This document shows, one piece after another, positions 35,052 through 52,819 of a stretch of 64,000 nt of DNA. The translations under genes were made by a program, and so were the position numbers. Within the stretch, counting starts at the first letter, position 1; each line of letters opens with the position of its first letter. Origin of the DNA: Perna viridis (lineage: Eukaryota); contig CM074513.1 in assembly GCA_037379345.1 (NCBI GenBank), forward strand, positions 14,260,001 through 14,324,000, given 5' to 3'. Below the pieces are notes generated by a model. It saw only the letters and a program-made list of their open reading frames with translations, was not told the origin of the DNA and searched no databases.

Positions 35052-35184
35052 AATAGTGTGAAAATGACAATTCTGCCCCACATGCAGAAATCCTGCATAA
35101 AATCCCCAACCCCGACGGCCAAATGCAAACGGACGGCATTCCCATTGAGCATAGGGTAAATACGAGAAATATGACTTTCGTACA
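35052..35184 (+). repeat. Polinton left terminal inverted repeat
   Basis: Reverse complement of 48604-48736 with 9 mismatches. Begins AATAGT rather than AGTAGT. Confidence 0.95.
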
Positions 35185-35527
35185 CAATGGATTCGTTGAC
35201 ATTCCCACAGATGGGGATGACTTCATCAGAGAAGACGCCTTCCAGGAGAAGGTGCAGGACCAGAATCAGGAAGCACTCAAATGGAAGGACTTACCCACCG
35301 GGGCGATCTATAAGATCTTGGAGGTGGTAGAAGTGGATGGGAAATTCGGTAAAAGCAAAATCCTCACCCTGAAGAATCGAGACGGAGAGACCACCAGGGT
35401 ATGGGCCTGCCCCACTCTTAACAAAGAGAAGGGTCCCTTGCAAAGAGCTTTCGTTCGGAGCACTGGATTCAAGGTGAGCAAGAAATCTCAGCAGCAGTAC
35501 CTCTCCTATGATCTGGTGAGGAAGTAA
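35123..35527 (+). CDS. Polinton small protein, possibly an OB-fold ssDNA-binding protein
   Basis: Intact 134-aa ORF starting inside the left TIR. Beta-rich pattern YKILEVVEVDGKFGKSKILTL..VWA. AATAAA overlaps the stop codon. Function is inference. Confidence 0.6.
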   Translation: MQTDGIPIEHRVNTRNMTFVHNGFVDIPTDGDDFIREDAFQEKVQDQNQEALKWKDLPTGAIYKILEVVEVDGKFGKSKILTLKNRDGETTRVWACPTLNKEKGPLQRAFVRSTGFKVSKKSQQQYLSYDLVRK

Positions 35528-35579
35528 TAAAAAATAATCGAGGGCTATGGGTATAGGGTTCGAAATTTCCCAATCCGAA

Positions 35580-35978
35580 TTACTGGAAAAACTCCAGGCC
35601 TTTGCTCACTGCATCTTCGATCTTGGATTGGTAGGATCTGACGATGCGCACGGTATCTTCATGCTTTTTACGCTTTTGGCGGATGCGCTTGGCTAGCACC
35701 GCCAACCCCGCCATCGTGATGGAATTCACGACGGCTAGTGAGCTCAACGGAATGCATGCTACGGCACCTATCCCCGTTGCGGCGGTGCTGAGTGTGCCGG
35801 TTGTGCAAATGACATTGAGCACGGCAAATGAACCCAGAGCAAAAGACACCACTTTGTCCACTCGTTTATAGATCCTCGACAGTCGGGCGTATTTATGCAT
35901 TTCGAATTTGAGCTCTCGCTCGATAGATTCGATCCTAGCTTCCCTGTAGGCTTTCTTCCCAAAGTCTACGGAGTCCAT
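35580..35978 (-). CDS. Polinton two-TM-helix membrane protein (C-terminus possibly truncated)
   Basis: Two hydrophobic segments followed by a basic KRIRQKRKKH tail. TAAATAAATG start context. Confidence 0.7.
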   Translation of the reverse strand: MDSVDFGKKAYREARIESIERELKFEMHKYARLSRIYKRVDKVVSFALGSFAVLNVICTTGTLSTAATGIGAVACIPLSSLAVVNSITMAGLAVLAKRIRQKRKKHEDTVRIVRSYQSKIEDAVSKGLEFFQ

Positions 35979-35982
35979 TTAT

Positions 35983-36561
35983 TTATAGGAGCATGCCTAA
36001 GATGGGGATGCTTTTGAAGGGGCTATTGGGACCTAAGATCAACCCCTTACCATCGTAGAACCGACGTCCGCTCTTCAAGTATAAGCCATCGCCGTAAGTA
36101 TTGGGCAAAGTACCTGGGCTGAGATACAGACCACGACCATGAGGTTTCACGCAGCATACTTTCCCACCCTTCTTGAGAAATAATCCAGATCCCACGGCCT
36201 TTTGGATGGCTGCGCTTCCCAAACCGCTCAATGCGCCCACGCCCAAAGCGGGCAGCACGGTTTTGGCCAGCATGGGCAGCGCGGCAGAGGCGAGACCTGC
36301 CAGCATGGGGAGGAATCCACCTTCTTTCTGCACCTTATGCCTCACCTGCTTCGGACTCATCTCCAAGACCATTCCACCCTTACCGCTCTGCAAGAGCTTG
36401 GCGATGCGCTGGATCTGACGGCGGGTGAGGAGCATCTTATGCTCGCCGGATAGGTTTGCATGCGATAATCGGACGCTCACGGGGCAACCGTTCTTTGCCG
36501 CAAGCTGGATCTTCTCTGCCTGACCTTTCGTCAAGTTCAGACCATACTCTTGATAATCCAT
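35983..36561 (-). CDS. Polinton virion core/structural precursor
   Basis: 192 aa. EGGFLPMLAGL hydrophobic segment and repeated GxG-L(Y/F/I)L motifs, probable maturation cleavage sites. Confidence 0.75.
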   Translation of the reverse strand: MDYQEYGLNLTKGQAEKIQLAAKNGCPVSVRLSHANLSGEHKMLLTRRQIQRIAKLLQSGKGGMVLEMSPKQVRHKVQKEGGFLPMLAGLASAALPMLAKTVLPALGVGALSGLGSAAIQKAVGSGLFLKKGGKVCCVKPHGRGLYLSPGTLPNTYGDGLYLKSGRRFYDGKGLILGPNSPFKSIPILGMLL

Positions 36562-36565
36562 TTAT

Positions 36566-37237
36566 TTATACCTCACGCAGATGGAAGCGGATGGTGAGAT
36601 TCTCCCCTCGCAGATCGATGGGGGGAGCGTCTTGATCGGTCAGATACGTCTGCATGCGATCGATGGTCCTCAGGGTCACGGGTAAGTAGACAAGATTCTT
36701 GGGAGTCTGGATGATCTTCATGCCAGGATCGACTGCGGGAAAGAAGCTATAGATGGTGGACTGCTGCGTGCCGTTGACGTAGGTATACGTCCGGCGCTCG
36801 AATCCAAGCACCGTATTTAGGCTATTAGGCACGTCGAAATCCACTTGATAATTTCTGGCGAGAGTAAGGGTTGCTCTCAGCGTCGCGCGATTGGCATCGA
36901 GAAGGACCTTAGCCTTATGCTTATTGAGCCGCAGTTGCCGCTGGATCTCATCGTTGATATCGTCGATGCCGTAGGAGCCGGTGCTCAGATCGACGGGAAA
37001 CCAGCTAGCCCCGTCATCGGGAGAGTAGCGGAAGGAATTATTACCTGCGTGAATATTGGGGATGGAGTAGTAGGTCTCCAGATTCACGAGGGCCATCTCG
37101 TAAGATTTCTCCTCGCGCAGCTGGAGGGGTGGGTTGAAGCGAGTCAAGATCTGACTATCGTTCCCAGAGACGATGAAGGAGAACCCGTGCTTGGGCTCGG
37201 TATTGGTGGCGATTTTCCGCAAAAGTGAAACGTCCAT
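36566..37237 (-). CDS. Minor capsid protein (penton), probably with an in-frame deletion
   Basis: TRFNPPLQL..YEMALVNLETYYSIPNI N-terminus and LTDQD..IDLRGENLTIRFHLR C-terminus. Abrupt TYTY|VNG join. Confidence 0.85.
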   Translation of the reverse strand: MDVSLLRKIATNTEPKHGFSFIVSGNDSQILTRFNPPLQLREEKSYEMALVNLETYYSIPNIHAGNNSFRYSPDDGASWFPVDLSTGSYGIDDINDEIQRQLRLNKHKAKVLLDANRATLRATLTLARNYQVDFDVPNSLNTVLGFERRTYTYVNGTQQSTIYSFFPAVDPGMKIIQTPKNLVYLPVTLRTIDRMQTYLTDQDAPPIDLRGENLTIRFHLREV

Positions 37238-37251
37238 TTATCTAAGCCTCC

Positions 37252-38478
37252 TCAGAAAACGACGCTCATCTTCTGGCCGTCGGATTCGAATGGAGGATTC
37301 GATCGGAGATGACCAGGGCGAAGGCTTGGGTATTGGCAGGGACGTTGCGCTCGAAGTCGGCTCGGATCTGGATATCCACCGTCGACTCTTTCAGCCGCTC
37401 GGACTGATGGCTCACGTCGATGACGAATAGGGGATAGAGATCGATGAAGTCGGAGGGATTGATGCCGCCATTGCTCAGCAGACTTTCCATGCTATAGAAT
37501 TTCTTGGGGAATTCGACAGCCTTCTTATAGACCCTGCATTGGGTGAAGCCAGCATTGAAGTCCACGGCGGGATAGCGCTCCGCATTGAGGGTCACGTGAA
37601 TATTTTGCAATCGGCAGTGGTCGAAGACGGCGGCATTATGCAGCTGGTCGTTGTCCCTTTCGATGATGCATCGCGGTTTTTCTCGCCCGCTTTTCGCGGC
37701 TAGGCTCCAATGAAATTGTGAGGTCTGGGGCACGGCTATGGAGTCGCACTGCCTCATGCGAAATCCGCAATCGATTTTGGTCTTGCTCTGGATGGTCTTA
37801 TAGAGCCGCAGCTTCTTTTCGTCGGACGGGATGACGTGGGGGACGAACCAGGAGACCTTGCTCAAGACTACTTTGGCCACGTCGTTGACGGCAGCGGCTC
37901 GGAGGATGGCATTGGCATCCGAATCGCGCACCTGGGAGAGCTCGTGCTTGAATCCGTAGACGATCTTATCGTAGTCCTCGGCAAAGCCAAAGTTGTGCTT
38001 GAGAAGGATGGAGAAGGAAAAGGACCCCTTATTGGCTGGCTTGGTGATGATATACCCGCGACGTGCTGCGAATCCAACGTTATCTGCCTCAGCATCGGCC
38101 GTGGAGTCTGAACCATAGCTGGTTGAGGCCTTGCGATTTGGAGAAGTCGTCGGGATACGTCAGCATCCCTAGCATGGTGGTGGCGATGCCGGGGTCGTTG
38201 AGATGCTCGATCTGCTGGCCGGAGAGTCGGTAGCTGACGAGCGATACCAGATCGCCATCGCCATACGCAGCGCCATCATTCTTCTGAAGTCGGCTTTCGA
38301 TCAAAAGATAGCTTTCGGCGGGATGGAGGAAGAGATCCTGAATCTCGATATTGATGCGTATCTCTGCGCCGGCATTATTCAGCTGCGCCCCGGCTTGAGG
38401 TTCGTATTCGTGAACCTGATATTCCTGGAGACTTTCATCGAAAGTCAGTCCTTCGGTGATAGAGAGCATATCGGCCAT
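37252..38478 (-). pseudogene. Double jelly-roll major capsid protein, frameshifted
   Basis: Fragments FDESL..YQVHEYEP, QDLFLHPAESYLLIE, FGFAEDYDKIVYGFKHEL, SKVSWFVPHV, YPLFVIDVSHQSERLK and FESDGQKMSVVF* lie in different frames. Confidence 0.88.
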
Positions 38479-38485
38479 GATATAT

Positions 38486-38824
38486 TTATCTATAGCGCTG
38501 GACGAAGTCGTGGATGGTGGCGATGCCCCCGCCCGAGATGAGATTATTGAGACGGGTCTGCTGCTGTGGGGTCATCTTGGTGGGTGGTGCTTTAGGCTTC
38601 TTTTTGCGGGTCACTCGATTGACGACGTGGTCCACCGCCTTGCTCGCACCTTTCTCCACGCCTTTCAAAGCTGCATTGGAGGAGGCGCTCACGGCCTTGC
38701 TACCCAACGTCTTGGCGGCGGAGGAGGTAAGCACCCGTCCGGCAAGATTGGCGATGGTATCGAAAAGGCCTCTTCCGCCGACGGCATACTTCCGACGATA
38801 TCCGTGATTCACTACTAAAGGCAT
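38486..38824 (-). CDS. Small basic core protein precursor
   Basis: 112 aa, K/R/A/S-rich. VGGRG-LFDTIANLAGRVL is a probable cleavage site followed by an amphipathic helix. Confidence 0.7.
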   Translation of the reverse strand: MPLVVNHGYRRKYAVGGRGLFDTIANLAGRVLTSSAAKTLGSKAVSASSNAALKGVEKGASKAVDHVVNRVTRKKKPKAPPTKMTPQQQTRLNNLISGGGIATIHDFVQRYR

Positions 38825-38835
38825 CGTAAATATAT

Positions 38836-39681
38836 TTAGAGGAGCTTCCGATGCAGCTTCTCGTACTCACCCCTGCTGATATGACCGGACTTCCTCATGG
38901 CGTCGAGGATGGCCACGATTTCGTTGCGCACCCCATTATTTCCGGCCTGGTAGGTGGCGGCGCAAAGATCGAGACGATCCAGCAATTGGTCGAAGCACGT
39001 GGGGAGGAAGACGGTCGATACCCCGCTCCCATACTTATCTTGCTTATAGATGTACGAGACGATCTCCTTCCTTGCCTTGGGGGTCTGCGAGAGCGCAGAG
39101 TTGCCTTGATACATGGCATTGGATGCTCGTAGGATATCACCATAGGTATGCAGGTCATCCACCTCGAAATCGTTGGGATGCTTCATGACCATAAGTTCCC
39201 ATAGGCCGGGGGTACCCTTATAGCGCTCGTCATCGACGAGGATATCGTCTCCATTGAAGGTGACAGGCAGACTCCCGATCATGATGGCGCCGTCTTCCAC
39301 TCGCAATCCAAAGGTATGGTCGGCCTTGGGAGTCATACTGAGCTGAAGATAATGGGTGGCTCGCGGACCGAGGTTGGTTCTCAATGCTTGCTCGATGGCA
39401 AGCGGATCGTCGTCGCCCTCGGCGGCAGGGAGAGGAGGGGGAAGGGCAGGCACCGGGGCGGGCAGAGCGAGTGGGATATCTTCGATCTTTTTGGTGATCT
39501 GGGAGGCGGTCTCCTTTTGCGTCTCGACCACCGGCTTGAATATCTTGGAGAGATCGCGGCTGAGTCCGATCTTATCTAGGCGACGCTGCATATCGCTGGC
39601 CTGGATGCTACGCTTGGTCTCCTGCAAGTCCCTGGCAAGCGCCTCACGCTGCTTGGGGTCGGTGATCTTGATGAACGTCAT
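38836..39681 (-). CDS. Conserved Polinton protein of unknown function, copy 1
   Basis: 281 aa. FIKITDPKQRE..IFKPVVE, YKGTPGLWEL and C-terminal LLDRLDL..YQAGNNGVRNEI motifs recognised as Polinton-associated. Confidence 0.75.
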   Translation of the reverse strand: MTFIKITDPKQREALARDLQETKRSIQASDMQRRLDKIGLSRDLSKIFKPVVETQKETASQITKKIEDIPLALPAPVPALPPPLPAAEGDDDPLAIEQALRTNLGPRATHYLQLSMTPKADHTFGLRVEDGAIMIGSLPVTFNGDDILVDDERYKGTPGLWELMVMKHPNDFEVDDLHTYGDILRASNAMYQGNSALSQTPKARKEIVSYIYKQDKYGSGVSTVFLPTCFDQLLDRLDLCAATYQAGNNGVRNEIVAILDAMRKSGHISRGEYEKLHRKLL

Positions 39682-39849
39682 TTTATTTATAGCATCGCCA
39701 ACGCCCCTTAGCGATGAATCGAACGCTCCAAGGCGATGGATCGAACGCCCCTAAGCGATGGATCGATCGCCCCATAACGTTCAAGCCATCTCCCATGCTT
39801 TTTGCCTCCTGCCTCAGCGGGATGCAAAAACAATAGATTCCCGAAGATC

Positions 39850-40518
39850 CTACGCACTCTCCATGCATTTGGAGGAGCAGAAAGGCTTCACGCCTTTGAG
39901 GAGATCGTACTCCCCCACCATCCTCACTTTTACGCCCGACCAGAGGGTGGCAAATTTGGGTACGTATATAGTCTCCTCGTGATGCAAAGCCTTACCGCGG
40001 GCGATCGAGACTCCGCACCGGCAGCATGCCTCGGGGAAAAGCTTCGAATGCCTCTTGCACTTATCACTGTCCGATATGGAGGGATACGTGCACTGATGGC
40101 CGCGGATGGTCTTGATGCAGCACTGGGGTCCGGGCGGCGGCTTAGATTTGCGGTTGGAGTGGGAATTATAGGTCCTTCCTTCGAAATCCTGATGATCGAT
40201 GCGGCGAATGAGCGTGAGTCCGCACTTATTGCAGAAGCCATCCTCAAGGCTATGGCGGCAGCGGCACTCGCACTTTCCAAATTCGCCCAGATACTGGCGG
40301 ATGCAGGGGTGGCAAATATTGCCGAGAAGTTTGCACTCACACTCTTCCCCGTATCGGCCAAAATAGTGATCCGCAGAGCACCTCTCGCACCTATCCAGCC
40401 ATCGGGGAGGCTTGGAGAGTATATCCAAGAGGTATCCCCTTAACTCAGCGATCGATGGAGATCGACCTTTCTCTAGCTCGAACTGATTCTCCAGGAAAAA
40501 TTCCTTCAAGTGATCCAT
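39850..40518 (-). CDS. Cys-rich multi-zinc-finger protein, copy 1
   Basis: 222 aa with several CxxC pairs, a C-x7-C-x10-C-x2-H knuckle, and a C-terminal CCRCG...FCSSKC (TRASH/FCS-like) motif. Confidence 0.7.
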   Translation of the reverse strand: MDHLKEFFLENQFELEKGRSPSIAELRGYLLDILSKPPRWLDRCERCSADHYFGRYGEECECKLLGNICHPCIRQYLGEFGKCECRCRHSLEDGFCNKCGLTLIRRIDHQDFEGRTYNSHSNRKSKPPPGPQCCIKTIRGHQCTYPSISDSDKCKRHSKLFPEACCRCGVSIARGKALHHEETIYVPKFATLWSGVKVRMVGEYDLLKGVKPFCSSKCMESA

Positions 40519-40526
40519 TCTTTATC

Positions 40527-41288
40527 TTAGACTCGATAGAAATCGTCTAGATTGCATCGATATTTCCCATTCGTCTTGGGGCTCGTGAGATCGATGGTCA
40601 TGAATCTGTAAGGCTTGGATCAGCAGTGGTCGCATAAGGCATCGAATTGGGCTGGGGTGAGATCGCCGCAATGATCTCGGCGGATATGGTCGCGATTCTT
40701 GGCATGCTGCTCGAAGAGGCATATGAAGTTGGCATTCTCCCGGATCGATTGCCGCGGGAGCTTGAAGTAATTTTGGCAGAGGTAGAAGCAGTCGACGTTA
40801 TTATGCCGACCGCGCACGTAGTAATCCTCGCACTTGCTCTGCTTGCTCAGCATCAAGTCGTCGAAGACCATGAGATTTTTTGCGGGCGGTATCGAGCTAT
40901 CGGGGATCGGGCACGTCGCTCGCCTCCTCGAAGAAGCTTCGATGCCGCTAGACTTGGACGGCGGCTTCATCATTTGCACCACGTCGACCAGAGAGTTGGG
41001 ATAGCTATCCTTGATGGAGAGAAGGTCGCGGATATCGTCTTTCGAAAATCCTTTCCCCAGCGCCTACCGCAGCAGCTGATAGATGGGCTGGTGGAGTGAT
41101 TTTCCGAAGACGTAGAGTCGATCGTAGTCGAGCCATCCATCGCGCAGGAGGAGATTATTCAGCAGAGTCGTCTTGCCGCAGTCTGATTTCCCGATGATCA
41201 GACCTCGGATGGATCGCTGCGGGAGGAGAAAGTGGTTATGCCGACGACTCGCGGCGGGCTCATCGTAGGTAAGGTCTTCAACGTCCAT
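40527..41288 (-). pseudogene. A32/FtsK-like packaging ATPase, copy 1
   Basis: Walker A GKSDCGKT, Walker B LMVFDD, RGRHNN motif. In-frame TAG (41064), TGA (40620) and frameshifts. Confidence 0.9.
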
Positions 41289-41307
41289 TTATCTATATAA
41301 AATTGGA

Positions 41308-41595
41308 ATGTATTGCTTGAAGTGCCAGAAGAAGACGGAGACGAATAATCGCGCCGTGATCACGAGTGATGACGGACGGCGGCGGCGGAAGGTGGGGACC
41401 TGCGCCGAGTGCGGTGCGCGAAAGTCGGAATTCATCAAGACGGAGAGGGGCGCCGGACTCATGAATAAAATGATCAATCGGATGCCCGTCGAGATGCATC
41501 TGCCGGGGCATAATTTCACCGGTCCGGGAACCAGACTCAGCCAGCAACTCAATGCCGACGACATACTTCCGACGATATCCGTGATTCACTACTAA
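41308..41595 (+). pseudogene. Truncated zinc-ribbon/PLA2 gene copy ending at the duplication junction
   Basis: Identical to the 44084 gene up to QQLNADD, then reads into the core-protein gene antisense. Lacks the catalytic HD. Confidence 0.85.
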
Positions 41596-41612
41596 AGGCA
41601 TCGTAAATATAT

Positions 41613-42458
41613 TTAGAGGAGCTTCCGATGCAGCTTCTCGTACTCACCCCTGCTGATATGACCGGACTTCCTCATGGCGTCGAGGATGGCCACGATTTCG
41701 TTGCGCACCCCATTATTTCCGGCCTGGTAGGTGGCGGCGCAAAGATCGAGACGATCCAGCAATTGGTCGAAGCACGTGGGGAGGAAGACGGTCGATACCC
41801 CGCTCCCATACTTATCTTGCTTATAGATGTACGAGACGATCTCCTTCCTTGCCTTGGGGGTCTGCGAGAGCGCAGAGTTGCCTTGATACATGGCATTGGA
41901 TGCTCGTAGGATATCACCATAGGTATGCAGGTCATCCACCTCGAAATCGTTGGGATGCTTCATGACCATAAGTTCCCATAGGCCGGGGGTACCCTTATAG
42001 CGCTCGTCATCGACGAGGATATCGTCTCCATCGAAGGTGACAGGCAGACTCCCGATCATGATGGCGCCGTCTTCCACTCGCAATCCAAAGGTATGGTCGG
42101 CCTTGGGAGTCATACTGAGCTGAAGATAATGGGTGGCTCGCGGACCGAGGTTGGTTCTCAATGCTTGCTCGATGGCAAGCGGATCGTCGTCGCCCTCGGC
42201 GGCAGGGAGAGGAGGGGGAAGGGCAGGCACCGGGGCGGGCAGAGCGAGTGGGATATCTTCGATCTTTTTGGTGATCTGGGAGGCGGTCTCCTTTTGCGTC
42301 TCGACCACCGGCTTGAATATCTTGGAGAGATCGCGGCTGAGTCCGATCTTATCTAGGCGACGCTGCATATCGCTGGCCTGGATGCTACGCTTGGTCTCCT
42401 GCAAGTCCCTGGCAAGCGCCTCACGCTGCTTGGGGTCGGTGATCTTGATGAACGTCAT
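41613..42458 (-). CDS. Conserved Polinton protein of unknown function, copy 2
   Basis: Identical to 38836-39681 except one N/D change. Confidence 0.75.
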   Translation of the reverse strand: MTFIKITDPKQREALARDLQETKRSIQASDMQRRLDKIGLSRDLSKIFKPVVETQKETASQITKKIEDIPLALPAPVPALPPPLPAAEGDDDPLAIEQALRTNLGPRATHYLQLSMTPKADHTFGLRVEDGAIMIGSLPVTFDGDDILVDDERYKGTPGLWELMVMKHPNDFEVDDLHTYGDILRASNAMYQGNSALSQTPKARKEIVSYIYKQDKYGSGVSTVFLPTCFDQLLDRLDLCAATYQAGNNGVRNEIVAILDAMRKSGHISRGEYEKLHRKLL

Positions 42459-42626
42459 TTTATTTATAGCATCGCCAACGCCCCTTAGCGATGAATCGAA
42501 CGCTCCAAGGCGATGGATCGAACGCCCCTAAGCGATGGATCGATCGCCCCATAACGTTCAAGCCATCTCCCATGCTTTTTGCCTCCTGCCTCAGCGGGAT
42601 GCAAAAACAATAGATTCCCGAAGATC

Positions 42627-43295
42627 CTACGCACTCTCCATGCATTTGGAGGAGCAGAAAGGCTTCACGCCTTTGAGGAGATCGTACTCCCCCACCATCC
42701 TCACTTTTACGCCCGACCAGAGGGTGGCAAATTTGGGTACGTATATAGTCTCCTCGTGATGCAAAGCCTTACCGCGGGCGATCGAGACTCCGCACCGGCA
42801 GCATGCCTCGGGGAAAAGCTTCGAATGCCTCTTGCACTTATCACTGTCCGATATGGAGGGATACGTGCACTGATGGCCGCGGATGGTCTTGATGCAGCAC
42901 TGGGGTCCGGGCGGCGGCTTAGATTTGCGGTTGGAGTGGGAATTATAGGTCCTTCCTTCGAAATCCTGATGATCGATGCGGCGAATGAGCGTGAGTCCGC
43001 ACTTATTGCAGAAGCCATCCTCAAGGCTATGGCGGCAGCGGCACTCGCACTTTCCAAATTCGCCCAGATACTGGCGGATGCAGGGGTGGCAAATATTGCC
43101 GAGAAGTTTGCACTCACACTCTTCCCCGTATCGGCCAAAATAGTGATCCGCAGAGCACCTCTCGCACCTATCCAGCCATCGGGGAGGCTTGGAGAGTATA
43201 TCCAAGAGGTATCCCCTTAACTCAGCGATCGATGGAGATCGACCTTTCTCTAGCTCGAACTGATTCTCCAGGAAAAATTCCTTCAAGTGATCCAT
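42627..43295 (-). CDS. Cys-rich multi-zinc-finger protein, copy 2
   Basis: Same protein as 39850-40518. Confidence 0.7.
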   Translation of the reverse strand: MDHLKEFFLENQFELEKGRSPSIAELRGYLLDILSKPPRWLDRCERCSADHYFGRYGEECECKLLGNICHPCIRQYLGEFGKCECRCRHSLEDGFCNKCGLTLIRRIDHQDFEGRTYNSHSNRKSKPPPGPQCCIKTIRGHQCTYPSISDSDKCKRHSKLFPEACCRCGVSIARGKALHHEETIYVPKFATLWSGVKVRMVGEYDLLKGVKPFCSSKCMESA

Positions 43296-43303
43296 TCTTT
43301 ATC

Positions 43304-44064
43304 TTAGACTCGATAGAAATCGTCTAGATTGCATCGATATTTCCCATTCGTCTTGGGGCTCGTGAGATCGATGGTCATGAATCTGTAAGGCTTGGATCAG
43401 CAGTGGTCGCATAAGGCATCGAATTGGGCTGGGGTGAGATCGCCGCAATGATCTCGGCGGATATGGTCGCGATTCTTGGCATGCTGCTCGAAGAGGCATA
43501 TGAAGTTGGCATTCTCCCGGATCGATTGCCGCGGGAGCTTGAAGTAATTTTGGCAGAGGTAGAAGCAGTCGACGTTATTATGCCGACCGCGCACGTAGTA
43601 ATCCTCGCACTTGCTCTGCTTGCTCAGCATCAAGTCGTCGAAGACCATGAGATTTTTGCGGGCGGTATCGAGCTCTCGGGGATCGGGCACGTCGCTCGCC
43701 TCCTCGAAGAAGCTTCGATGCCGCTAGACTTGGACGGCGGCTTCATCATTTGCACCACGTCGACCAGAGATTGGGGATAGCTATCCTTGATGGAGAGAAG
43801 GTCGCGGATATCGTCTTTCGAAAATCCTTTCCCCAGCGCCTACCGCAGCAGCTGATAGATGGGCTGGTGGAGTGATTTTCCGAAGACGTAGAGTCGATCG
43901 TAGTCGAGCCATCCATCGCGCAGGAGGAGATTATTCAGCAGAGTCGTCTTGCCGCAGTCTGATTTCCCGATGATCAGACCTCGGATGGATCGCTGCGGGA
44001 GGAGAAAGTGGTTATGCCGACGACTCGCGGCGGGCTCATCGTAGGTAAGGTCTTCAACGTCCAT
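43304..44064 (-). pseudogene. A32/FtsK-like packaging ATPase, copy 2
   Basis: Same motifs and the same TAG (43840) and TGA (43397) as copy 1. Frameshift before FFEEASDVPDP. Confidence 0.9.
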
Positions 44065-44083
44065 TTATCTATATAAAATTGGA

Positions 44084-44572
44084 ATGTATTGCTTGAAGTG
44101 CCAGAAGAAGACGGAGACGAATAATCGCGCCGTGATCACGAGTGATGACGGACGGCGGCGGCGGAAGGTGGGGACCTGCGCCGAGTGCGGTGCGCGAAAG
44201 TCGGAATTCATCAAGACGGAGAGGGGCGCCGGACTCATGAATAAAATGATCAATCGGATGCCCGTCGAGATGCATCTGCCGGGGCATAATTTCACCGGTC
44301 CGGGAACCAGACTCAGCCAGCAACTCAATGCCGACGACACCCCCAAACCTTGGTCCAGACCCATCAATCGAGTCGATGAGGCCGCCTATCGCCACGATCT
44401 TTGCTACGCCAATCACAAAGATACGGCCGCACGCAATTCGATCTGCGATAAGACGATTCTAGCCTCCCTCGATGCCATCCCCAATCCCACTGCACGCGAG
44501 CGTCTCGAGCGTGGTATCGTCAGGACCCATCATCGGCACCAAAGCACGATTTGGGCTGGGTGTGGGTGGTAA
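44084..44572 (+). CDS. Zinc ribbon plus parvovirus VP1-like phospholipase A2 domain protein
   Basis: MYCLKC..GTCAECG ribbon. HLPGHNFTGPG Ca-binding loop. DEAAYRHDLCY and later CD catalytic motifs. Probable +1 indel near 44525. Confidence 0.88.
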   Translation: MYCLKCQKKTETNNRAVITSDDGRRRRKVGTCAECGARKSEFIKTERGAGLMNKMINRMPVEMHLPGHNFTGPGTRLSQQLNADDTPKPWSRPINRVDEAAYRHDLCYANHKDTAARNSICDKTILASLDAIPNPTARERLERGIVRTHHRHQSTIWAGCGW

Positions 44573-45504
44573 AAAAAGTCCGATGGACGGATAAGCTAGC
44601 CGAAGAGCTGCACAAGCCAGTCCGGCGCAAATTTCATAAGCGTCGCGTGATGGTAGGTGGGGTGGATGAGATCTGGGCTGCCGATCTCGTAGATATGAGC
44701 GCCTTCTCCCGCGATAACCGAGGCTTCAAATACCTTCTGAGCATCATCGACGTCTTCTCCAAGTACGGCTGGTTGGTGCCGTTCAAGGATAAGAAAGACG
44801 CCACGGTGCGAGATGCCTTCCGGACCGTCTTCAAGGATCGCACGCCCGAGAAGCTATGGACCGATAAGGGCACGGAATTTTATAATCGCGAGGTGAAGGA
44901 TCTGCTCCGAAAGCACGACGTCGATCTCTACTCCACCGAGAACGAAGAGAAATCGAGCGTGGTGGAGCGCTGGAATCGTACCATGAAGGAGAAGATGTTC
45001 AAATACTTTTCGGCCAATTCCACGCGCTCCTATCTCCCCGTCCTGGACGATCTCGTCCGCCAGTATAATACCACCAAGCATCGATCCATCAAGATGACCC
45101 CCATCGCCGCCAGCCAGAAAGAGCACGAGTCTAAGGTCTTCTGGAATCTCTACGGAGACCTTCCACCCATGCAGCCTCAGCGATTCGACGTCGGCGATCA
45201 GGTCTGGATCACCAAGAAGAAGGGCATCTTCGAGAAGAGATATACTCCGCGATGGACGGAGATCTTTACCATCGCCCAGGCCCTAGCGACGCAGCCGCCC
45301 ACCTATCGCCTCAAAGACTATAAGGGTGAGGAAATCGAGGGATCCTTTTACGAGCCTGAGCTCCAGCGCACCGACCAGGATATCTTCCGCATCGAGAAAA
45401 TCCTGAGCCGACGCATCCGGAATGGGAAGAAAGAAATCCGCGTCAAGTGGAGAGGATATCCCAAAACCTTCAATTCCTGGGTCAAGGAGTCCGACTGGCA
45501 ATGA
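44551..45504 (+). CDS. Retroviral-like (rve) DDE integrase with C-terminal chromodomain
   Basis: WAADLVDM, IIDVFSK, WTDKGTEF and SVVERWNRT motifs. IEKILSRR..VKWRGYPKTFNSWV chromodomain. No ATG at the 5' end of the conserved region. Confidence 0.95.
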   Translation: MGWVWVVKKVRWTDKLAEELHKPVRRKFHKRRVMVGGVDEIWAADLVDMSAFSRDNRGFKYLLSIIDVFSKYGWLVPFKDKKDATVRDAFRTVFKDRTPEKLWTDKGTEFYNREVKDLLRKHDVDLYSTENEEKSSVVERWNRTMKEKMFKYFSANSTRSYLPVLDDLVRQYNTTKHRSIKMTPIAASQKEHESKVFWNLYGDLPPMQPQRFDVGDQVWITKKKGIFEKRYTPRWTEIFTIAQALATQPPTYRLKDYKGEEIEGSFYEPELQRTDQDIFRIEKILSRRIRNGKKEIRVKWRGYPKTFNSWVKESDWQ

Positions 45505-45552
45505 TCCCCCAGGCTTTCTGGTCTCGATCAAGGGAGACCAGAAAGTCTTGAT

Positions 45553-46029
45553 TTATGCATGCTTCAGCTCGACGAAGACCCTTAATGCGTCTAGATCCTC
45601 CTGCAGGCGATCGTAAAGGGCTTTGGTGATGGGCTCATTATAGGTCTTGGGGAGAGGGAGATTTAGCAGGTGATATTTTTGCATATCTAGGTCCTTAGTC
45701 ATCAAGCCGCCATTGGTCGAGACGCACTCTGACTTATCGACTTTGCCATCTTCCACGGTCATTAGCTTTTTGGTAAGGTCTTTGATGGATGCGTCATACT
45801 CCCTTTGCATCCGCTTGATGATCATCTGCATCTGCTTCATTTCCGAATCTAGCTCTTCGAGGTCTTTCATACCGTCTTTCATCTGCTGATTGACCCATCG
45901 CTTCGTCACAGCGTCCGAGCTGCCCTGGGGCAATCCCAAGCTGGTGATGCGATGCTCATTCATATCGAGATCCTGGTGCATCCGCCAGACGGGCATGCGC
46001 TTTCTCGAGTGAGATCCAAACTTATCAAT
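45553..46029 (-). CDS. Fibre-like trimeric coiled-coil protein
   Basis: Two LDMxxHRITxLxxPxxxxDAVTKxWV-type neck motifs separated by a coiled coil. Track ORF starts at 45996; the likely original start at 46029 is now ATT. Confidence 0.6.
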   Translation of the reverse strand: MDKFGSHSRKRMPVWRMHQDLDMNEHRITSLGLPQGSSDAVTKRWVNQQMKDGMKDLEELDSEMKQMQMIIKRMQREYDASIKDLTKKLMTVEDGKVDKSECVSTNGGLMTKDLDMQKYHLLNLPLPKTYNEPITKALYDRLQEDLDALRVFVELKHA

Positions 46030-46033
46030 TTAT

Positions 46034-46447
46034 CTATAGTCCGAAGATCATCTCCTTGAGCGTCCGACCTTCCAATAGGAGCTTCAGGACGTGCAGGCAA
46101 AAGTGCCCGCATACCACGTCGTCGCGCCGCTGGAGCTCATCGGTATTATATCGAATTTCCGGCCGCAGATAGTTGACCATCTCGTGGGGTGGGGGCAGGC
46201 CGTAGGGGTCGAAGTAGACTTTGAATCCTCCACGATTATGCCAGCACGTCCAATGCGTGCCAGGGCCATTGCGATCGTCGTGATTCAGGATGCCGCATTC
46301 GGCGGGATGGGGGTTGGATGGTAGGGCATCGCGCATGAATACTCCTCTGAATCGATGGATGCCTAGGGCTTTGGTGGCTTCCTCGAGCTCTACGTTGGAG
46401 AGGGGCTTATGGGGGAGGAGGAGGCCGTGCACGCGTATGCTGCTCAT
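46034..46447 (-). CDS. Adenain-like (clan CE) cysteine maturation protease
   Basis: GTHWTCW (His), YFDPYG (Asp) and LQ..DVVCGHFC (Gln/Cys) catalytic motifs. Confidence 0.93.
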   Translation of the reverse strand: MSSIRVHGLLLPHKPLSNVELEEATKALGIHRFRGVFMRDALPSNPHPAECGILNHDDRNGPGTHWTCWHNRGGFKVYFDPYGLPPPHEMVNYLRPEIRYNTDELQRRDDVVCGHFCLHVLKLLLEGRTLKEMIFGL

Positions 46448-46462
46448 TTATCTAGGTACGGG

Positions 46463-48665
46463 CTAAGGAAGCTGAAAATCTAGATTGCACTGGTTGAGTG
46501 CCGCGCCCCGATACACTTCCCGGTGAGATGGTCGTGGTCCCGCACCTTATCCCCTTCCAATTCACCCCCGCAAATGTGGCAGTGCGTGCTTGATTCGAAG
46601 CCCTCCTTATCCTCGTCGCTCATCACCATCGACTTCTCCTTGCATATCTTGCTGATCGTCTGAACTTCCTCTTCGATGCACTGCACGAATTTCTTAGCCG
46701 CATCTTCCCCGCAGTAGACGACCGATTCCTTGTAGTCGCCGTGGGCATACTTCACGCGATAGCAGAAACCTGATGGTCGGTGCTGCTGATACTGCTTCGT
46801 GTAGGACTTGGTCGGATCGGGCTGGCAGGTATCGATCTTCTCCGTGAAGCATTCAAAGTCCGCATAGATCGCGAATGGGACTCTCATCTGCTTCTTGTGG
46901 TTGTGAAAGGCTATGGCGGATCCTTCCTCCGGCATCTCGATACTGATTGCATCCTTCGGGCTGCAATATTCCATATGATCGTCCAAGAGATCCTGCCTGG
47001 TGAAGTGGGAGAGGCATCTTCGGCAAAAGTACGCTTGTCCATCGTGGTTCGTGACCTGCGCTGTCAGAAGGCGTGATAGGCTCTTGATCCAGCAATAATG
47101 CTGCTTGCCTTCACGGGTCAGGAAGAGGAGATCTACGTGGGTGGGGCCTGTATTTTTCGATATCTTGAGGGGGTAAACCTGGAGATCCTGTTCTTCATCT
47201 TCACCCTTCTTTACGCCATTGAAGCCAAAGACGTTGACGTTGATGGTAGGATTCTGCCTTTCAAATTTATCGATTGCCTTGAGCGAAACCGGGAAGTCGA
47301 TGCCTTCAAATTTTAGCTCATCCCCCCACTTCACGTACTGACTGGGGCGATTGGCATGTTTCTGATCCACGTCCTCATGGTGAAGCGCGGAGAGGATAGC
47401 CCACTTGAAGCACTCCTGATCCTCGTTCTGCACGCCTTCTTTTTCGCGAGTGCTGATGGGGTCGGTATGAAGGAAGCCCCCTTGAGAGGCTTGAATTGGT
47501 TGAGGTGGATCTCAAGCTTCTCAACGTGTCCGAAAGTCCATCCGCTCCCTTCCCGCATGTATTTACCCATATTTTCCTTGATCTTCTCCATCATGAACGC
47601 AATCTCCAGATCGAGGTCTGCGGATTCGAAGAGGGTAGTAAGGCCCGATCTGAAGTAGGGGGTGATGTAGGTATTTTCTCCGGTCGCGGGGTTGGTCTTT
47701 ACCAGCTCTGCTAGAAGCACTAAGTGGACCTTCAATCCTTTCTTTTCGGTGAGAGCATCAGAGATGGTGGTGGAGATTGTGCTTCGACTTACCTTGAGAA
47801 ACGTAGCTACGTCATGTGATTTCAAGGGTTCGATGACGACTGTGCCAAATACACCATTCAGTGCCTGACGCCTATCGGTGATCTTGATCTCCTCTTCGAC
47901 TGGGGCGCTTCTGATGCTCTCTTCCACCTGCTGGAGTAGATCCTCTCTCTTGAGCCGGGAGTACCTGGTGAGCCCGCGATTCTTGGCGAGTGCTTTCAGC
48001 TGCTCCTTACTGAGGACTTCCCTACGGGTAAATTTACGGGCGGTTTTCTCCTCGATGAGCTTCACCAAGGCCTCCTTGTTCTTCCTACTGAATCCCCTTA
48101 GACCCTCATCCTTAGCTATTTGACGGAGGGTCTTCATGGTCTCTTTGACCACCATCTTCCCCTCGACTGGGATGACCTCTTCCTCCTGCTGGCGTGGTTG
48201 CTTGCTATGCATCCAGCAGCGACCACCCATCCCGGGCTTGCTCTTGCAGAACTGCCCCTTCTTCCTTTTCAGTGGATAATCGCAGGTGGTCTTCTGCTCC
48301 CCATCTGGTTGATGCTCAAATCGCGGCTTGGCGGACTGCGCACCACAATTTTGACACATATGGGTATGCTCATCCATCTGCGCCATGCTAGGGTTATCGC
48401 AGCACTGCTGCTGCTTTTGGGGGATTGGGGTTGGAATGGTATCCTCCAAATCTTCTTGATTCTTCAGAAATAAATCCTGTAAGCGATCCATATTTTCACT
48501 ATTGGATGCCATCCCTTTATTTATTTCAATCTGTGACACACTTCTCTTTAAGGTGTCCTTATCCACATCCCCACTATCCTCTGGGGCGACCTGACTTATG
48601 CTCTGTGCGAAAGACATAATTCTTGTATTTACCCTATGCTCAATAGGGATGCCATCCGTTTGCAT
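46463..48665 (-). pseudogene. Protein-primed family B DNA polymerase (pPolB), N-terminal half only
   Basis: Two Rho_N/SAP-like repeats; REGSGW..FKPLKGASFIPTP; vOTU-like NEDQECFKWAIL..HYCWIK; C2H2 finger; ExoI IYADFE; EndoVII-like CHIC..VRDHDHLTG. Frameshifts near 47433 and 46515. Polymerase core absent. Confidence 0.92.
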
Positions 48666-48736
48666 TTGACCGTCGGGGTTGGGGATTTTATGCAGGATTT
48701 CTGCATGTGGGGCAGAATTGTCATTTTCACACTACT
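48604..48736 (-). repeat. Polinton right terminal inverted repeat
   Basis: - strand reads AGTAGTGTGAAAATGACAATTCTGCCCC..., the canonical Polinton terminus. Confidence 0.95.
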
Positions 48737-50320: not shown

Positions 50321-51292
50321 ATGAAGACTGAAGCCGATACTCCGGGTAAACTAAAAGACCTGATAGAAGGGTTAAGACGAGGAAAGGGCAGAAGACCCGA
50401 TTTAGACGACGGTGCAAATGCGGCTGACGAATCAGCCGAGGAAAATGATGTCGACGTACAACCCAAATGCCCCAAATCAGACGATGCACACGATGCTGAT
50501 GAAGAACTGCAGGATCTAGAAAAACAGTTGAGGGATCTCAAACTTGAAAGGAAGAAAGCACATTCACGCCAGCAAATTGAACAAGAAAAATCCAGTTTGC
50601 GGACTTTGCAAGTCTCGGCGATGAATTCCGGAATGCATTCGCCCAAGACAGGACCAACGATGTCACCTTCACAGTTTCCTTCAAATACAGGTGAACCTAT
50701 TAGCTTAGTAGATACTTCCAAAGAACAAAAAGTGCTTCAGATTTTGTCATTTATCTGGTCAGAGCCCGCTGAACGATTTCAAACATTTACTTTGGGCGGT
50801 GAAGTTGAGTTTCGCATAGGCAAAAAGAAAACGTTGGATAAGGTTACAATAGAGGATTGGGGCTACGCGAACATTAAAATCATGCAAGAATTGGTGAAAC
50901 AAAAGCGGCTAACGGACATTAATGGTTACCTCAACTATATCGCCGATATCTATCGCTTAGCCGCCCGGAATGTATGATATTCAGTTTTGCTGTACGACAA
51001 AGAATATCGACAAAAGCAGGCCGATCAGTTATTCGAATGGGGAACATACAGACAAGAATTGCGTGACTTTCAGTTAGTGTCGAAACTGGATAACCCAACA
51101 TCTAGAGTATTCGCAGAAGCTTCCAAAGTCGTCATTAAGGGTAGAAATCCGAAACAGATTACTGATGGTCGGCGAAAAGGTCCGTTTCTGCCCAATGGAC
51201 GCGAGATCTGTCGAAGCTTCAATTACAATTCATGTTATCGTGTAGATTGCAAAATGATTCAATTTGTTTTTCTAGTGCTCACTCTGCGTTAA
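50321..51292 (+). pseudogene. Gag-like ORF1 of the YR retrotransposon
   Basis: NV*YSVLLYDKEYRQKQA (stop at an expected Trp) and C-terminal ICRSFNYNSCYRVDCK CCCH-type finger. Confidence 0.75.
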
Positions 51293-51403
51293 ATGGTCAC
51301 AATCAACCAATGACGAGACCAAAAATCCATGAAGTGCCTCAAAATCGGGACTAGTTGTGGAGCCGAAGGCGACATCCGCGATTAACACAGTGCATTTCGA
51401 GGC

Positions 51404-52810: not shown

Positions 52811-52819
52811 GGTGCAAAT

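What the first reader, a model, noticed from the sequence alone, without database searches (positions are those of the whole stretch)
35052..48736. Both Polinton TIRs encode the same N-terminal peptide on two unrelated genes, differing only at silent sites
Seen: the outer 67 bp of the two TIRs differ at one base. An ATG inside each TIR (35123 + and 48665 -) starts an inward-reading ORF, and both begin MQTDGIPIEHRVNTR. All four differences in these 15 codons are synonymous third-position changes (GAC/GAT, ATT/ATC, CCC/CCT, ACG/ACA). Similarity then fades (NMTFVH vs IMSFAQ). One ORF is the terminal-protein/pPolB polyprotein; the other is a 134-aa possibly SSB-like protein. Inference: the inner TIR is no longer homogenised at DNA level but is conserved as protein. 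The origin-proximal TIR would supply a shared promoter and a shared peptide tag (localisation or partner binding) to two replication proteins at opposite genome ends. Four of four changes at third positions has a chance of about (1/3)^4, so this is suggestive but a small sample.
Basis: partly seen in the sequence, partly recalled or inferred. Interest (0 to 1): 0.82.

Follow-up and report, generated by a model that had tools for sequence, protein, structure and literature searches.

The report
Mussel Polinton repeats share gene starts
The two end-repeats of a decayed virus-like element in a mussel genome each hold the start of a different gene, so two unrelated proteins begin with the same roughly 21 amino acids, as already known for related linear plasmids; whether that shared peptide does anything is not shown.

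Summary
A 13.7-kb Polinton/Maverick-like element (35052-48736, GC 53% in a 34% host, 6-bp target duplication AAAACA) has 131-134-bp terminal inverted repeats. An ATG in each repeat opens an inward ORF. Both start MQTDGIPIEHRVNTR, and the four DNA differences in those 15 codons are third-position transitions.

New evidence:
- The same peptide heads both gene families in other Mytilus copies: 3 left-end and 4 right-end relatives.
- The shared stretch is really 21 codons. It includes a Met at codon 17 that nearly all relatives keep and where many predicted proteins start.
- The silent-only pattern has a nominal P of 0.002-0.03. It contrasts with 4 replacements and 0 silent changes in codons 16-21 (Fisher 0.029).
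- Right-end relatives do carry replacements in the peptide. In one sublineage the upstream ATG is out of frame with Met17.
- The left protein models as a weak OB fold (SSB-like). The polymerase gene here is a frameshifted, truncated remnant.

The best reading is that repeat maintenance carries the 5' ends of both terminal genes. This is already described for polymerase-bearing linear mitochondrial plasmids. The peptide is probably translated in this subfamily. A dedicated tag role is unproven. DNA of relatives was not fetched, so dN/dS across copies remains undone.

The parts
35052..48736 (.). Whole Polinton/Maverick-like (adintovirus-like) element, defective copy, about 13.7 kb
   Evidence: GC about 0.46-0.58 inside against about 0.30-0.37 outside. 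Bounded by inverted repeats. Pfam hits to capsid, ATPase, integrase and PLA2-like domains.
35046..35051 (.). Left copy of the putative 6-bp target-site duplication AAAACA, inside a (CAAAA)n-like microsatellite
   Evidence: Read directly. Low-complexity family D2 on both flanks, so this is weak evidence on its own.
48737..48742 (.). Right copy of the putative 6-bp target-site duplication AAAACA
   Evidence: Read directly.
35052..35185 (+). Left terminal inverted repeat: a 71-nt non-coding tip plus the first 21 codons of the left gene
   Evidence: Arm 35054-35184. Base-by-base comparison. The family-level end of the shared stretch is at codon 21.
48603..48736 (-). Right terminal inverted repeat: a 71-nt tip plus the first 21 codons of the right gene
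   Evidence: Arm 48604-48734.
35082..35098 (+). Perfect 6-bp palindrome with a 5-nt spacer (ATGCAG N5 CTGCAT) inside the repeat tip, mirrored in the right repeat. Possible protein-binding site (inference).
   Evidence: Read.
35123..35167 (+). Left copy of the 15 codons encoding MQTDGIPIEHRVNTR
48621..48665 (-). Right copy of the same 15 codons, with four silent differences from the left copy
35123..35527 (+). Left terminal gene, 134 aa, intact. N-terminus (1-36) disordered, one helix, then a five-stranded OB-like barrel. SSB-like by fold only.
   Evidence: 26 Mytilus-type relatives ending at the same C-terminus. AlphaFold model pLDDT 61.6. Foldseek hits to OB-fold and ssDNA-binding proteins with E 5e-4 to 0.08 and TM 0.35-0.41. 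No Pfam, PHROG or PDB sequence hit.
46454..48665 (-). Remnant of the protein-primed family B polymerase gene, broken. Its pieces lie in three reading frames (at least two frame changes) and the polymerase half is absent (one truncation or deletion). The N-terminal 444-aa ORF holds about 168 disordered residues, two HeH/SAP (Rho_N-like) units and a folded alpha/beta domain.
   Evidence: tblastn of relatives, counts and outer bounds only. Rho_N 2.8e-06. Relatives named DNA-directed DNA polymerase or Rho_N-containing. Model.
46034..46447 (-). 137-aa ORF, possible adenain-like cysteine protease (weak)
   Evidence: Peptidase_C5 E 0.14, below cut-off. The order of His and Cys motifs was seen in the translation. 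Inference.
45553..45996 (-). 147-aa coiled-coil-like ORF, function unknown
   Evidence: Only sub-threshold coiled-coil families.
44551..45504 (+). Integrase: rve core plus C-terminal chromodomain. No ATG at the ORF start, and it overlaps the preceding ORF.
   Evidence: rve 5.8e-10, Chromo 1.2e-07.
44084..44572 (+). 162-aa ORF with DUF5679 and a parvovirus-type phospholipase A2-like domain
   Evidence: DUF5679 9.6e-10, Phospholip_A2_4 1.2e-08. PLA2-like genes are noted for adintoviruses in PMC8502044.
38775..44344 (.). Internal tandem duplication: two units of about 2.78 kb, nearly identical, out of register by one base over part of their length. It duplicates a 281-aa ORF, a Cys-rich 222-aa ORF, the ATPase remnant, a 22-nt repeat array and the 5' part of the PLA2-like ORF.
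   Evidence: Families D1, D3 and D4. Duplicated ORFs. Outer bounds.
40677..40880 (-). Packaging ATPase (A32-like), domain match in duplication unit 1. The gene is fragmentary; only about profile positions 99-167 of 242 are recognisable.
   Evidence: Pox_A32 E 2e-04.
43454..43663 (-). Packaging ATPase (A32-like), domain match in duplication unit 2. Fragmentary.
   Evidence: Pox_A32 E 5.1e-05, 23.3 bits against a cut-off of 22.8.
37266..38478 (-). Major capsid protein gene (double jelly roll), broken: two ORF pieces in different frames (at least one frame change)
   Evidence: DJR-like_dom 2.7e-37 covering profile positions 99-316. Assignment of the N-terminal piece rests on position and inference.
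36566..37237 (-). 223-aa ORF next to the capsid gene. No family hit; a minor capsid protein is expected at this position (inference).
35580..36561 (-). Two small ORFs (132 aa and 192 aa) with hydrophobic Gly/Ala-rich stretches. Function unknown.

Best explanation
The terminal inverted repeat of this mussel Polinton family is about 134 bp. It runs across the leader and the first 21 codons of both inward-facing terminal genes: an OB-fold, SSB-like gene on the left and the N-terminal extension of the protein-primed polymerase on the right.

Because the two repeats are kept alike, two unrelated proteins inherit one upstream region, one start and one N-terminus. The mechanism that keeps them alike is inferred: end-to-end correction during protein-primed replication, or gene conversion. 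The shared N-terminus is therefore a structural consequence of repeat maintenance. The same is described for polymerase-bearing linear mitochondrial plasmids, whose DNA and RNA polymerase genes share their first 32-72 residues.

Homogenisation weakens inward. Mismatches are about 3% in the 71-nt tip, 9% in codons 1-15 and 22% in codons 16-21, and no similarity remains from codon 22.

In the window's subfamily an in-frame ATG lies 16 codons upstream of the family-wide Met17. The silent-only differences suggest these 15 codons are read and constrained. I put the probability that they are translated at about 0.55. A dedicated function of the peptide is not required by the data.

The copy in the window is dead. 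Its polymerase, capsid and ATPase genes are broken, and 2.8 kb is tandemly duplicated.

Shown: the anatomy, the sharing, and its recurrence in relatives. Inferred: the homogenisation mechanism, translation from the first ATG, and ssDNA binding.
For: - Repeat arms and base-by-base comparison.
- The tip is unique to the two ends.
- Element genes.
- The identical 15-residue start on left-gene relatives P0051, P0053 and P0059 and right-gene relative P0027, with close variants on P0028, P0029 and P0044.
- Per-position counts show residues shared between the two gene families at positions 1-21 and none at positions 22-27 (positions 28 and 30 coincide in a residue, which I read as chance).
- The left-specific states of codons 18 and 21 (MTFVH) recur in P0001, P0002, P0006 and P0007. 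The right-specific states (MSFAQ) recur in P0027. These differences therefore predate this insertion.
- 4/4 silent differences, P 0.002-0.012.
- 0N:4S against 4N:0S, Fisher 0.029.
- All five differences up to codon 15 are replacements in the overlapping +2 frame, so that frame is not the conserved one.
- Both N-termini are predicted disordered.
- The precedent in linear plasmids (PMC3673629).
Against: - Only one left/right DNA pair was compared, with four informative sites. DNA of relatives was not examined, so no dN/dS across copies exists.
- Met17 is invariant in all sequences that reach it. Many predicted proteins start there: 7 close left-gene relatives, 7 M. coruscus right-gene models starting MAYVF and 3 starting MAF.
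- In the sublineage of P0020 and P0062, the repeat upstream of Met17 is read in other frames, so the first ATG cannot be joined to Met17 there.
- Only about 70 nt are available for promoter plus leader before the first ATG.
- The homogenisation mechanism is inferred from other systems, not observed here.
Confidence: 0.62

Rival explanations
1. Selected shared tag. The 15-21-residue peptide is a functional module that the repeat supplies to two replication proteins, for example for common localisation, partner binding at the genome ends or common turnover. It is kept by purifying selection on both genes.
For: - 0 replacements against 4 silent differences in 15 codons, while silent sites are about 40% diverged and the repeat tip only about 3%.
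- An abrupt switch to replacements at codon 16.
- 15/15 identity in three other left-gene copies and one right-gene copy. P0044 keeps 14/15 although the rest of that protein is only 54% identical.
- A short motif in a disordered N-terminus is a plausible form for a tag.
Against: - Right-end relatives carry T3S, H10Y, R11K and R11G.
- A sublineage with several open OB-fold ORFs has the first ATG out of frame with Met17.
- Other sublineages have quite different N-termini before the conserved core.
- High conservation is also expected of any repeat DNA with a cis role.
- The analogous shared N-termini in linear plasmids are explained without a function (PMC3673629).
- There is no expression or protein evidence.
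Confidence: 0.2
2. Untranslated leader. Translation of both genes starts at Met17. The 48 nt upstream are promoter-proximal leader conserved as repeat DNA, and the third-position pattern of four differences is chance.
For: - Met17 is invariant and is the predicted start in most relatives and sublineages of both genes.
- The frame between the first ATG and Met17 is not kept in the P0020/P0062 sublineage.
- A TATA-like CATAAAAT lies about 27 nt before the first ATG. That would put a transcript start at or just past that ATG (the spacing rule is textbook knowledge).
- Nominal P is only 0.002-0.03 from four sites, picked out post hoc.
Against: - The same gene clusters contain both Met17-start and first-ATG-start forms, so predicted starts reflect gene calling, not biology.
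- The residue change at the TATA-like motif in P0020 implies the motif is not conserved.
- Nine sequences of two genes keep the first ATG in frame.
- The N/S contrast with codons 16-21 runs opposite to what a leader followed by coding sequence predicts.
Confidence: 0.3
3. Post-integration decay. The two repeats were identical on insertion, and all differences are random mutations in a dead copy.
For: - The copy is dead: polymerase, capsid and ATPase genes are broken.
- All five differences up to codon 15 are transitions, and two are at CpG.
Against: - Mismatch density rises inward from about 3% to 9% to 22%, rather than being uniform.
- Side-specific residues at codons 16-21 recur in other copies of the same side.
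- P0020, read in the +2 frame, carries the left-copy state at three of the four informative sites.
Confidence: 0.05

Closest known systems
Subtelomeric gene homogenisation in linear mitochondrial plasmids with protein-primed polymerases (Brassica napus plasmid, Pichia kluyveri pPK2, Podospora anserina pAL2-1; Smith and Keeling 2013, PMC3673629)
   Same: These are linear-replicon-type elements with terminal inverted repeats and a protein-primed family B polymerase. Two unrelated genes at opposite ends read inward and start inside the repeats, so their deduced N-termini are identical (32-72 residues there, 15-21 here). The cause is attributed to repeat expansion and gene conversion between the ends.
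   Different: Here the element is a nuclear, integrating, capsid-encoding virus-like element of an animal. The partner gene is a small OB-fold protein, not an RNA polymerase. The shared stretch is shorter. The inner part shows silent-only divergence rather than identity. The copy seen is integrated and dead, so no linear form or terminal protein is observed.
Polinton/Maverick elements and adintoviruses (PMC8502044; PMC4028283)
   Same: Gene set: protein-primed polymerase, rve integrase with chromodomain, double jelly-roll capsid protein, A32-like ATPase, PLA2-like gene, possible adenain-like protease. Also terminal inverted repeats, a 6-bp target duplication and an animal host.
   Different: This copy lacks the polymerase catalytic half and has several broken genes and a 2.8-kb tandem duplication. 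In the papers I searched I found no description of repeats that encode a common N-terminus for both terminal genes.
Telomere expansion into genes in linear mitochondrial genomes, and the 'ebb and flow' of chloroplast inverted repeats (reviewed in PMC3673629)
   Same: A repeat boundary that lies inside a gene duplicates or homogenises a gene end. The boundary position differs between lineages. Here, P0008 seems to share a longer stretch with the polymerase side, and P0074 repeats the boundary segment three times.
   Different: Those are organelle genomes with no virus-like life cycle. There the duplicated pieces are often pseudogene fragments rather than the working starts of two genes.
Adenovirus and phi29-type inverted terminal repeats (own knowledge, not tested here)
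   Same: Terminal repeats of protein-primed linear genomes that hold the replication origin.
   Different: To my knowledge those repeats are non-coding. No named hit to their terminal proteins came back from any search here.

Membership tests
Polinton/Maverick (adintovirus-like) element | [quoted passage not shown] | tested here: met
   Remnant only. Relatives named DNA-directed DNA polymerase (P0033) and polymerase-containing models (P0030) align to 46454-48665. Pfam does not recognise the remnant. The catalytic half is absent.
Polinton/Maverick (adintovirus-like) element | Retrovirus-like (rve) integrase | tested here: met
   rve 5.8e-10 plus Chromo 1.2e-07 at 44551-45504.
Polinton/Maverick (adintovirus-like) element | Double jelly-roll major capsid protein | tested here: met
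   PF21738 2.7e-37. The gene is broken.
Polinton/Maverick (adintovirus-like) element | A32/FtsK-like packaging ATPase | tested here: met
   Pox_A32 E 5.1e-05, 23.3 bits against a cut-off of 22.8, and E 2e-04 for the duplicate. Fragments only.
Polinton/Maverick (adintovirus-like) element | Adenain-like cysteine protease | tested here: inconclusive
   Peptidase_C5 E 0.14, below cut-off.
Polinton/Maverick (adintovirus-like) element | Terminal inverted repeats and a 5-6-bp target-site duplication | tested here: met
   131-nt arms, 94%. AAAACA on both sides, but inside a microsatellite, so the duplication is weak evidence.
Repeat-embedded, homogenised gene starts (as in linear mitochondrial plasmids) | Two different genes at opposite ends, reading inward, with start codons inside the repeats | tested here: met
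   ATG 35123 (+) and ATG 48665 (-), both inside the arms.
Repeat-embedded, homogenised gene starts (as in linear mitochondrial plasmids) | Identical or near-identical deduced N-termini followed by unrelated sequence | tested here: met
   15/15 and then 17/21 identical in the window. The pattern recurs in 3 left-end and 4 right-end relatives, with none shared at positions 22-27 (positions 28 and 30 coincide, read as chance).
Repeat-embedded, homogenised gene starts (as in linear mitochondrial plasmids) | Concerted evolution of the two ends (gene conversion or end repair) | not tested
   This needs the DNA of both ends of many copies.
Repeat-embedded, homogenised gene starts (as in linear mitochondrial plasmids) | Free linear replicon with a covalently bound terminal protein | not testable with these tools
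   Only an integrated, dead copy is seen.
OB-fold single-stranded DNA-binding proteins | Five-stranded OB barrel | tested here: inconclusive
   The model has mean pLDDT 61.6, with the core at about 63-87, and strands at 62-73, 76-84, 90-95, 110-118 and 125-132. Foldseek hits: uS12, PrgE, Trf, telomere end-binding protein, baculovirus LEF-3, phage SSBs and DUF669. E ranges from 5e-4 to 0.08 and TM from 0.33 to 0.41.
OB-fold single-stranded DNA-binding proteins | Sequence membership in a described SSB family | tested here: not met
   No Pfam, PHROG or PDB-sequence match. The PDB hits were antibody light chains, which I treat as noise.
OB-fold single-stranded DNA-binding proteins | Binding of single-stranded DNA | not testable with these tools
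   Biochemical property.
Terminal proteins of protein-primed replicons (I had phi29 TP and adenovirus pTP in mind) | Recognisable sequence or fold similarity to a known terminal protein | tested here: not met
   Pfam gives only Rho_N. The Foldseek PDB search of the 444-aa model gives only weak Y-family polymerase hits with TM below 0.2. No terminal protein came back as a hit.
Terminal proteins of protein-primed replicons (I had phi29 TP and adenovirus pTP in mind) | Priming residue covalently linked to the 5' end | not testable with these tools
   Biochemical property.

The most novel reading that the evidence does not exclude
In an animal Polinton family, the inner part of the terminal repeat has escaped DNA homogenisation. 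It is held by purifying selection as a 15-residue N-terminal module placed on both terminal replication proteins: an SSB-like OB-fold protein and the terminal-protein/polymerase precursor. On this reading the repeat acts as a genetic device that gives one promoter and one functional peptide to two genes at opposite genome ends.
Probability: 0.2. Interest if true: 0.6.

Novelty: new member of a known kind. Interest (0 to 1): 0.4.

Why it matters
Little is known about how Polintons/Mavericks express and replicate their genomes. If both terminal genes really start inside the repeat, then the roughly 70-nt repeat tip must hold origin, integrase site and promoter together. The two terminal genes would then be co-regulated by construction. 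That would tie Polintons more closely, in genome logic, to the polymerase-bearing linear plasmids, where the same arrangement is known. It would also give annotators a practical rule for this family: look for the start codons of the end genes inside the repeats. The silent-only divergence offers a small, directly testable handle on whether a repeat-encoded peptide is selected. The practical weight is modest, because the copy is dead and the phenomenon has a precedent.

Tried and rejected
1. Predicted start sites of relatives as evidence against the peptide. The first alignment showed 0 of 26 left-gene relatives starting at the first ATG. I rejected this after cluster members showed 130-aa first-ATG forms beside 114-aa Met17 forms in the same clusters. 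Predicted starts reflect gene calling.

2. A conserved upstream ORF in the +2 frame (ATGs at 35064 and 35082). Rejected, because all five repeat differences are replacements in that frame.

3. The TATA-like CATAAAAT as proof that transcripts start past the first ATG. Weakened, because the residue change in P0020 at that spot implies the motif is not conserved.

4. Post-integration decay as the sole cause. Rejected on the inward gradient and on side-specific states shared with other copies.

5. Terminal-protein identity of the 444-aa ORF. Foldseek gave only Y-family polymerase hits with TM below 0.2, which I regard as meaningless for a model with 52% of residues under pLDDT 50.

6. Sequence-based identification of the 134-aa protein. 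Pfam, PHROGs and the PDB profile search gave nothing usable.

7. Other copies or solo repeats in the window. None found.

8. The large representative protein search was not used.

Possible slips, disclosed:
- Entries 2-3 say roughly where a relative's frame changes.

Full report
**What is there**

The window holds a 13.7-kb island of 46-58% GC in a host background of about 30-37% GC.
- It is bounded by an inverted repeat with arms at 35054-35184 and 48604-48734, 131 nt and 94% complementary.
- Two more bases on each side (one mismatch) bring the ends to 35052 and 48736. There the hexamer AAAACA flanks both sides (35046-51, 48737-42).
- That fits the 6-bp target duplication of Polintons. Both flanks are a (CAAAA)n-like microsatellite, so the duplication is weak evidence.
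- The repeat tip occurs only at these two places in the window.

**Gene content**

Pfam finds the following:
- a double jelly-roll capsid domain (2.7e-37);
- A32-like ATPase fragments;
- an rve integrase with a chromodomain;
- a DUF5679 plus parvovirus-type PLA2-like ORF;
- a Rho_N/SAP-type motif in the right terminal ORF.

An adenain-like protease is only hinted at (E 0.14). PLA2-like genes are a noted feature of adintoviruses (PMC8502044).

The best protein relatives of both terminal ORFs are hypothetical proteins of Mytilus galloprovincialis, M. edulis and M. coruscus. The flanks hold a matrixin exon, ankyrin-repeat ORFs and a reverse-transcriptase RNase H fragment. The host is therefore an animal, very probably a Mytilus mussel, and the element is a Polinton/Maverick (adintovirus-like) insertion.

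**State of the copy**

It is dead.
- The polymerase gene survives as a remnant (46454-48665). Its pieces lie in three reading frames, meaning at least two frame changes, and the whole polymerase half is missing (counts and outer bounds only).
- The capsid gene is in two ORF pieces in different frames, meaning at least one frame change.
- Each ATPase copy is recognisable only over about 70 central residues.
- A block of about 2.78 kb is tandemly duplicated (38775-44344). The two units are almost identical and one base out of register over part of their length.
- The left terminal gene (134 aa) is intact relative to its family.

**The observation**

It holds exactly.
- ATG 35123 (+) and ATG 48665 (-) lie inside the repeat arms and open inward ORFs of 134 and 444 aa.
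- Both begin MQTDGIPIEHRVNTR.
- The only differences in those 45 nt are at the third positions of codons 4, 6, 7 and 14. All four are transitions and all are silent. Two are in CpG.
- In the 71 nt outside the ATG there are two mismatches: 35053 and 35119. The latter also falls in phase 3.
- Codons 16, 18, 20 and 21 differ by replacements, Met17 and Phe19 are shared, and from codon 22 on nothing aligns.
- Mismatch density rises inward: about 3%, then 9%, then about 18-22%.

**Is it more than chance?**

- Under neutral substitution models the probability that four differences are all silent is 0.002-0.012.
- Allowing for CpG hypermutability (half of the six CpG-transition sites are silent), my hand calculation gives about 0.03.
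- The adjacent six codons show the opposite pattern: 4 replacements and 0 silent. The contrast gives a Fisher two-sided P of 0.029.
- Silent sites of the 15 codons are about 40% diverged while replacement sites are 0% and the repeat tip about 3%. That is not what recent homogenisation alone would give.
- In the overlapping +2 frame, which carries upstream ATGs at 35064 and 35082, all five differences are replacements. That frame is therefore not the conserved one.
- The sample remains four sites from one pair, picked out post hoc.

**Relatives, at the protein level**

The first search suggested the peptide was peculiar to this copy. None of 26 relatives of the left protein started with it, and the seven closest started at the equivalent of Met17. 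That impression was wrong.
- Members of the same 90% clusters include 130-aa forms (P0051, P0053) and P0059. These begin with the identical 15 residues, then I-M-(S/A)-F-V-Q, before the left-gene sequence.
- On the polymerase side, P0027 has the identical start. P0044 differs by R11G although the rest of the protein is only 54% identical. P0028 and P0029 carry T3S and H10Y, and P0029 also R11K.
- Position-by-position counts over 4 left-end and 5 right-end sequences show residues shared between the two gene families at positions 1-21. None are shared at positions 22-27, and positions 28 and 30 merely coincide in a residue, which I read as chance.
- The shared stretch is therefore 21 codons, not 15, and the repeat boundary sits at the same codon in all of them.
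- The window's left-specific residues at codons 18 and 21 recur in P0001, P0002, P0006 and P0007. Its right-specific residues recur in P0027. These differences are therefore older than this insertion.

**Counter-evidence**

- Met17 is invariant wherever the sequence reaches it, while its neighbours vary. It is also the predicted start of seven M. coruscus polymerase-side models (MAYVF...) and three M. galloprovincialis/M. edulis models (MAF...).
- In the sublineage of P0020 and P0062, the gene caller read the repeat upstream of Met17 in other frames than the window's. There the first ATG cannot be joined to Met17. That cluster nevertheless holds several open full-length OB-fold ORFs starting at Met17. 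These may be decayed copies, but two sequences share the state.
- Other sublineages have unrelated or longer N-termini before the conserved core. In P0008 the N-terminus resembles residues about 40-60 of the polymerase-side ORF, as if the repeat reached deeper there. P0074 carries three tandem 26-residue repeats of the boundary segment.
- P0020, read in the +2 frame, also reports nucleotides at the window's third positions. It carries the left-copy state at three of four informative sites and shows one further silent-site change. It shows none at second positions within the first ten codons. This is a small addition in favour of phase-3-only variation.

**The two proteins**

The 134-aa protein (model: mean pLDDT 61.6):
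- residues 1-36 are disordered, followed by one helix and a five-stranded barrel;
- Foldseek returns OB-fold proteins, several of them ssDNA binders: PrgE, telomere end-binding protein, baculovirus LEF-3, phage SSBs and DUF669;
- the scores are weak, with E from 5e-4 to 0.08 and TM from 0.33 to 0.41;
- no sequence family matches;
- 'SSB-like' is therefore a reasonable but weak label.

The 444-aa ORF (model):
- 168 disordered residues, then two HeH/SAP-like units, then a folded alpha/beta domain;
- no terminal protein came back from any search;
- I had phi29 TP and adenovirus pTP in mind, and that label stays an inference.

**How it most likely works**

The repeat carries the non-coding tip and the 5' ends of both inward-facing terminal genes. 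The tip contains a perfect 6-bp palindrome at 35082-35098 and probably holds the origin, the integrase site and the promoter. Whatever keeps the two repeats alike also keeps the two gene starts alike, with decreasing efficiency inward.

This arrangement is described for polymerase-bearing linear mitochondrial plasmids. There the DNA and RNA polymerase genes share their first 32-72 residues. It is attributed to repeat expansion and gene conversion (Smith and Keeling 2013, PMC3673629).

Within that frame, the silent-only divergence suggests that in this subfamily translation can start at the first ATG and that the 15 residues are constrained. Met17 is probably the ancestral start and possibly an alternative one. 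A specific tag function is possible but not required.

**Novelty**

In the papers I searched I found no description of this arrangement in Polintons or adintoviruses. The kind is known from related replicons, so I rate it a new member of a known kind.

The codon-level test across copies is therefore undone.
- I did not run the large representative search.

- Entries 2-3 say roughly where a relative's frame changes.

Noticed in passing
window 38775-44344: A tandem duplication of about 2.78 kb inside the element. The two units are nearly identical and differ by a one-base register change. It duplicates a 281-aa ORF, a Cys-rich 222-aa ORF, the ATPase remnant and the 5' part of the PLA2-like ORF. 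It could be a very recent event or an assembly artefact.
   Followed up: partly
window 39678-39816 and 42455-42593: Four head-to-tail copies of a 22-nt unit (AACGCCCC..GCGATGGATCG-like) between two minus-strand ORFs, present in both duplication units. Possibly a regulatory array of the element.
   Followed up: no
window 35082-35098 and 48690-48706: Perfect palindrome ATGCAG-N5-CTGCAT inside the non-coding repeat tip. A candidate protein-binding site.
   Followed up: no
window 35002-35053 and 48737-48828: Both flanks of the element are (CAAAA)n-like microsatellite, so the element sits inside a simple repeat. This makes the AAAACA target duplication hard to prove.
   Followed up: partly
window 34644-34671: A 28-nt stretch about 380 nt left of the element that is 79% complementary to the repeat tip (shares TGAAAATGACAA). 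It may be chance or a relic of another end.
   Followed up: no
window 49350-49552: 50-nt inverted repeat arms (78%) separated by 103 nt, just right of the element. A MITE-like hairpin.
   Followed up: no
window 50321-52875: A 218-aa acidic/coiled ORF and an ORF with a reverse-transcriptase RNase H domain (E 5e-4). These are remnants of a retroelement next to the Polinton.
   Followed up: partly
window 57036-59049 (-) and 1740-2186 (+): Host-type coding pieces. Two adjoining ankyrin-repeat ORFs (Ank families, E down to 1e-32) look like one gene interrupted. There is also a matrixin (Peptidase_M10, 2.3e-24) exon.
   Followed up: partly
relatives P0035, P0036, P0040, P0043: Annotated Mytilus gene models that fuse the Polinton polymerase-side N-terminal region to host-looking domains (diphthine-ammonia ligase, DZIP3-like HEPN, B-box). 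These are probably annotation chimeras caused by element insertions.
   Followed up: no
relatives P0074 and P0008: P0074 has three tandem 26-residue repeats, each beginning M(A/S)FVSNVRN, ahead of the OB-fold core. P0008's N-terminus resembles residues about 40-60 of the polymerase-side ORF. The repeat/gene boundary seems to move and to duplicate in some sublineages.
   Followed up: partly
window 35052-48736 against the flanks: The element is about 20 percentage points richer in GC than the surrounding mussel DNA. Either it arrived recently or it keeps a composition of its own.
   Followed up: no
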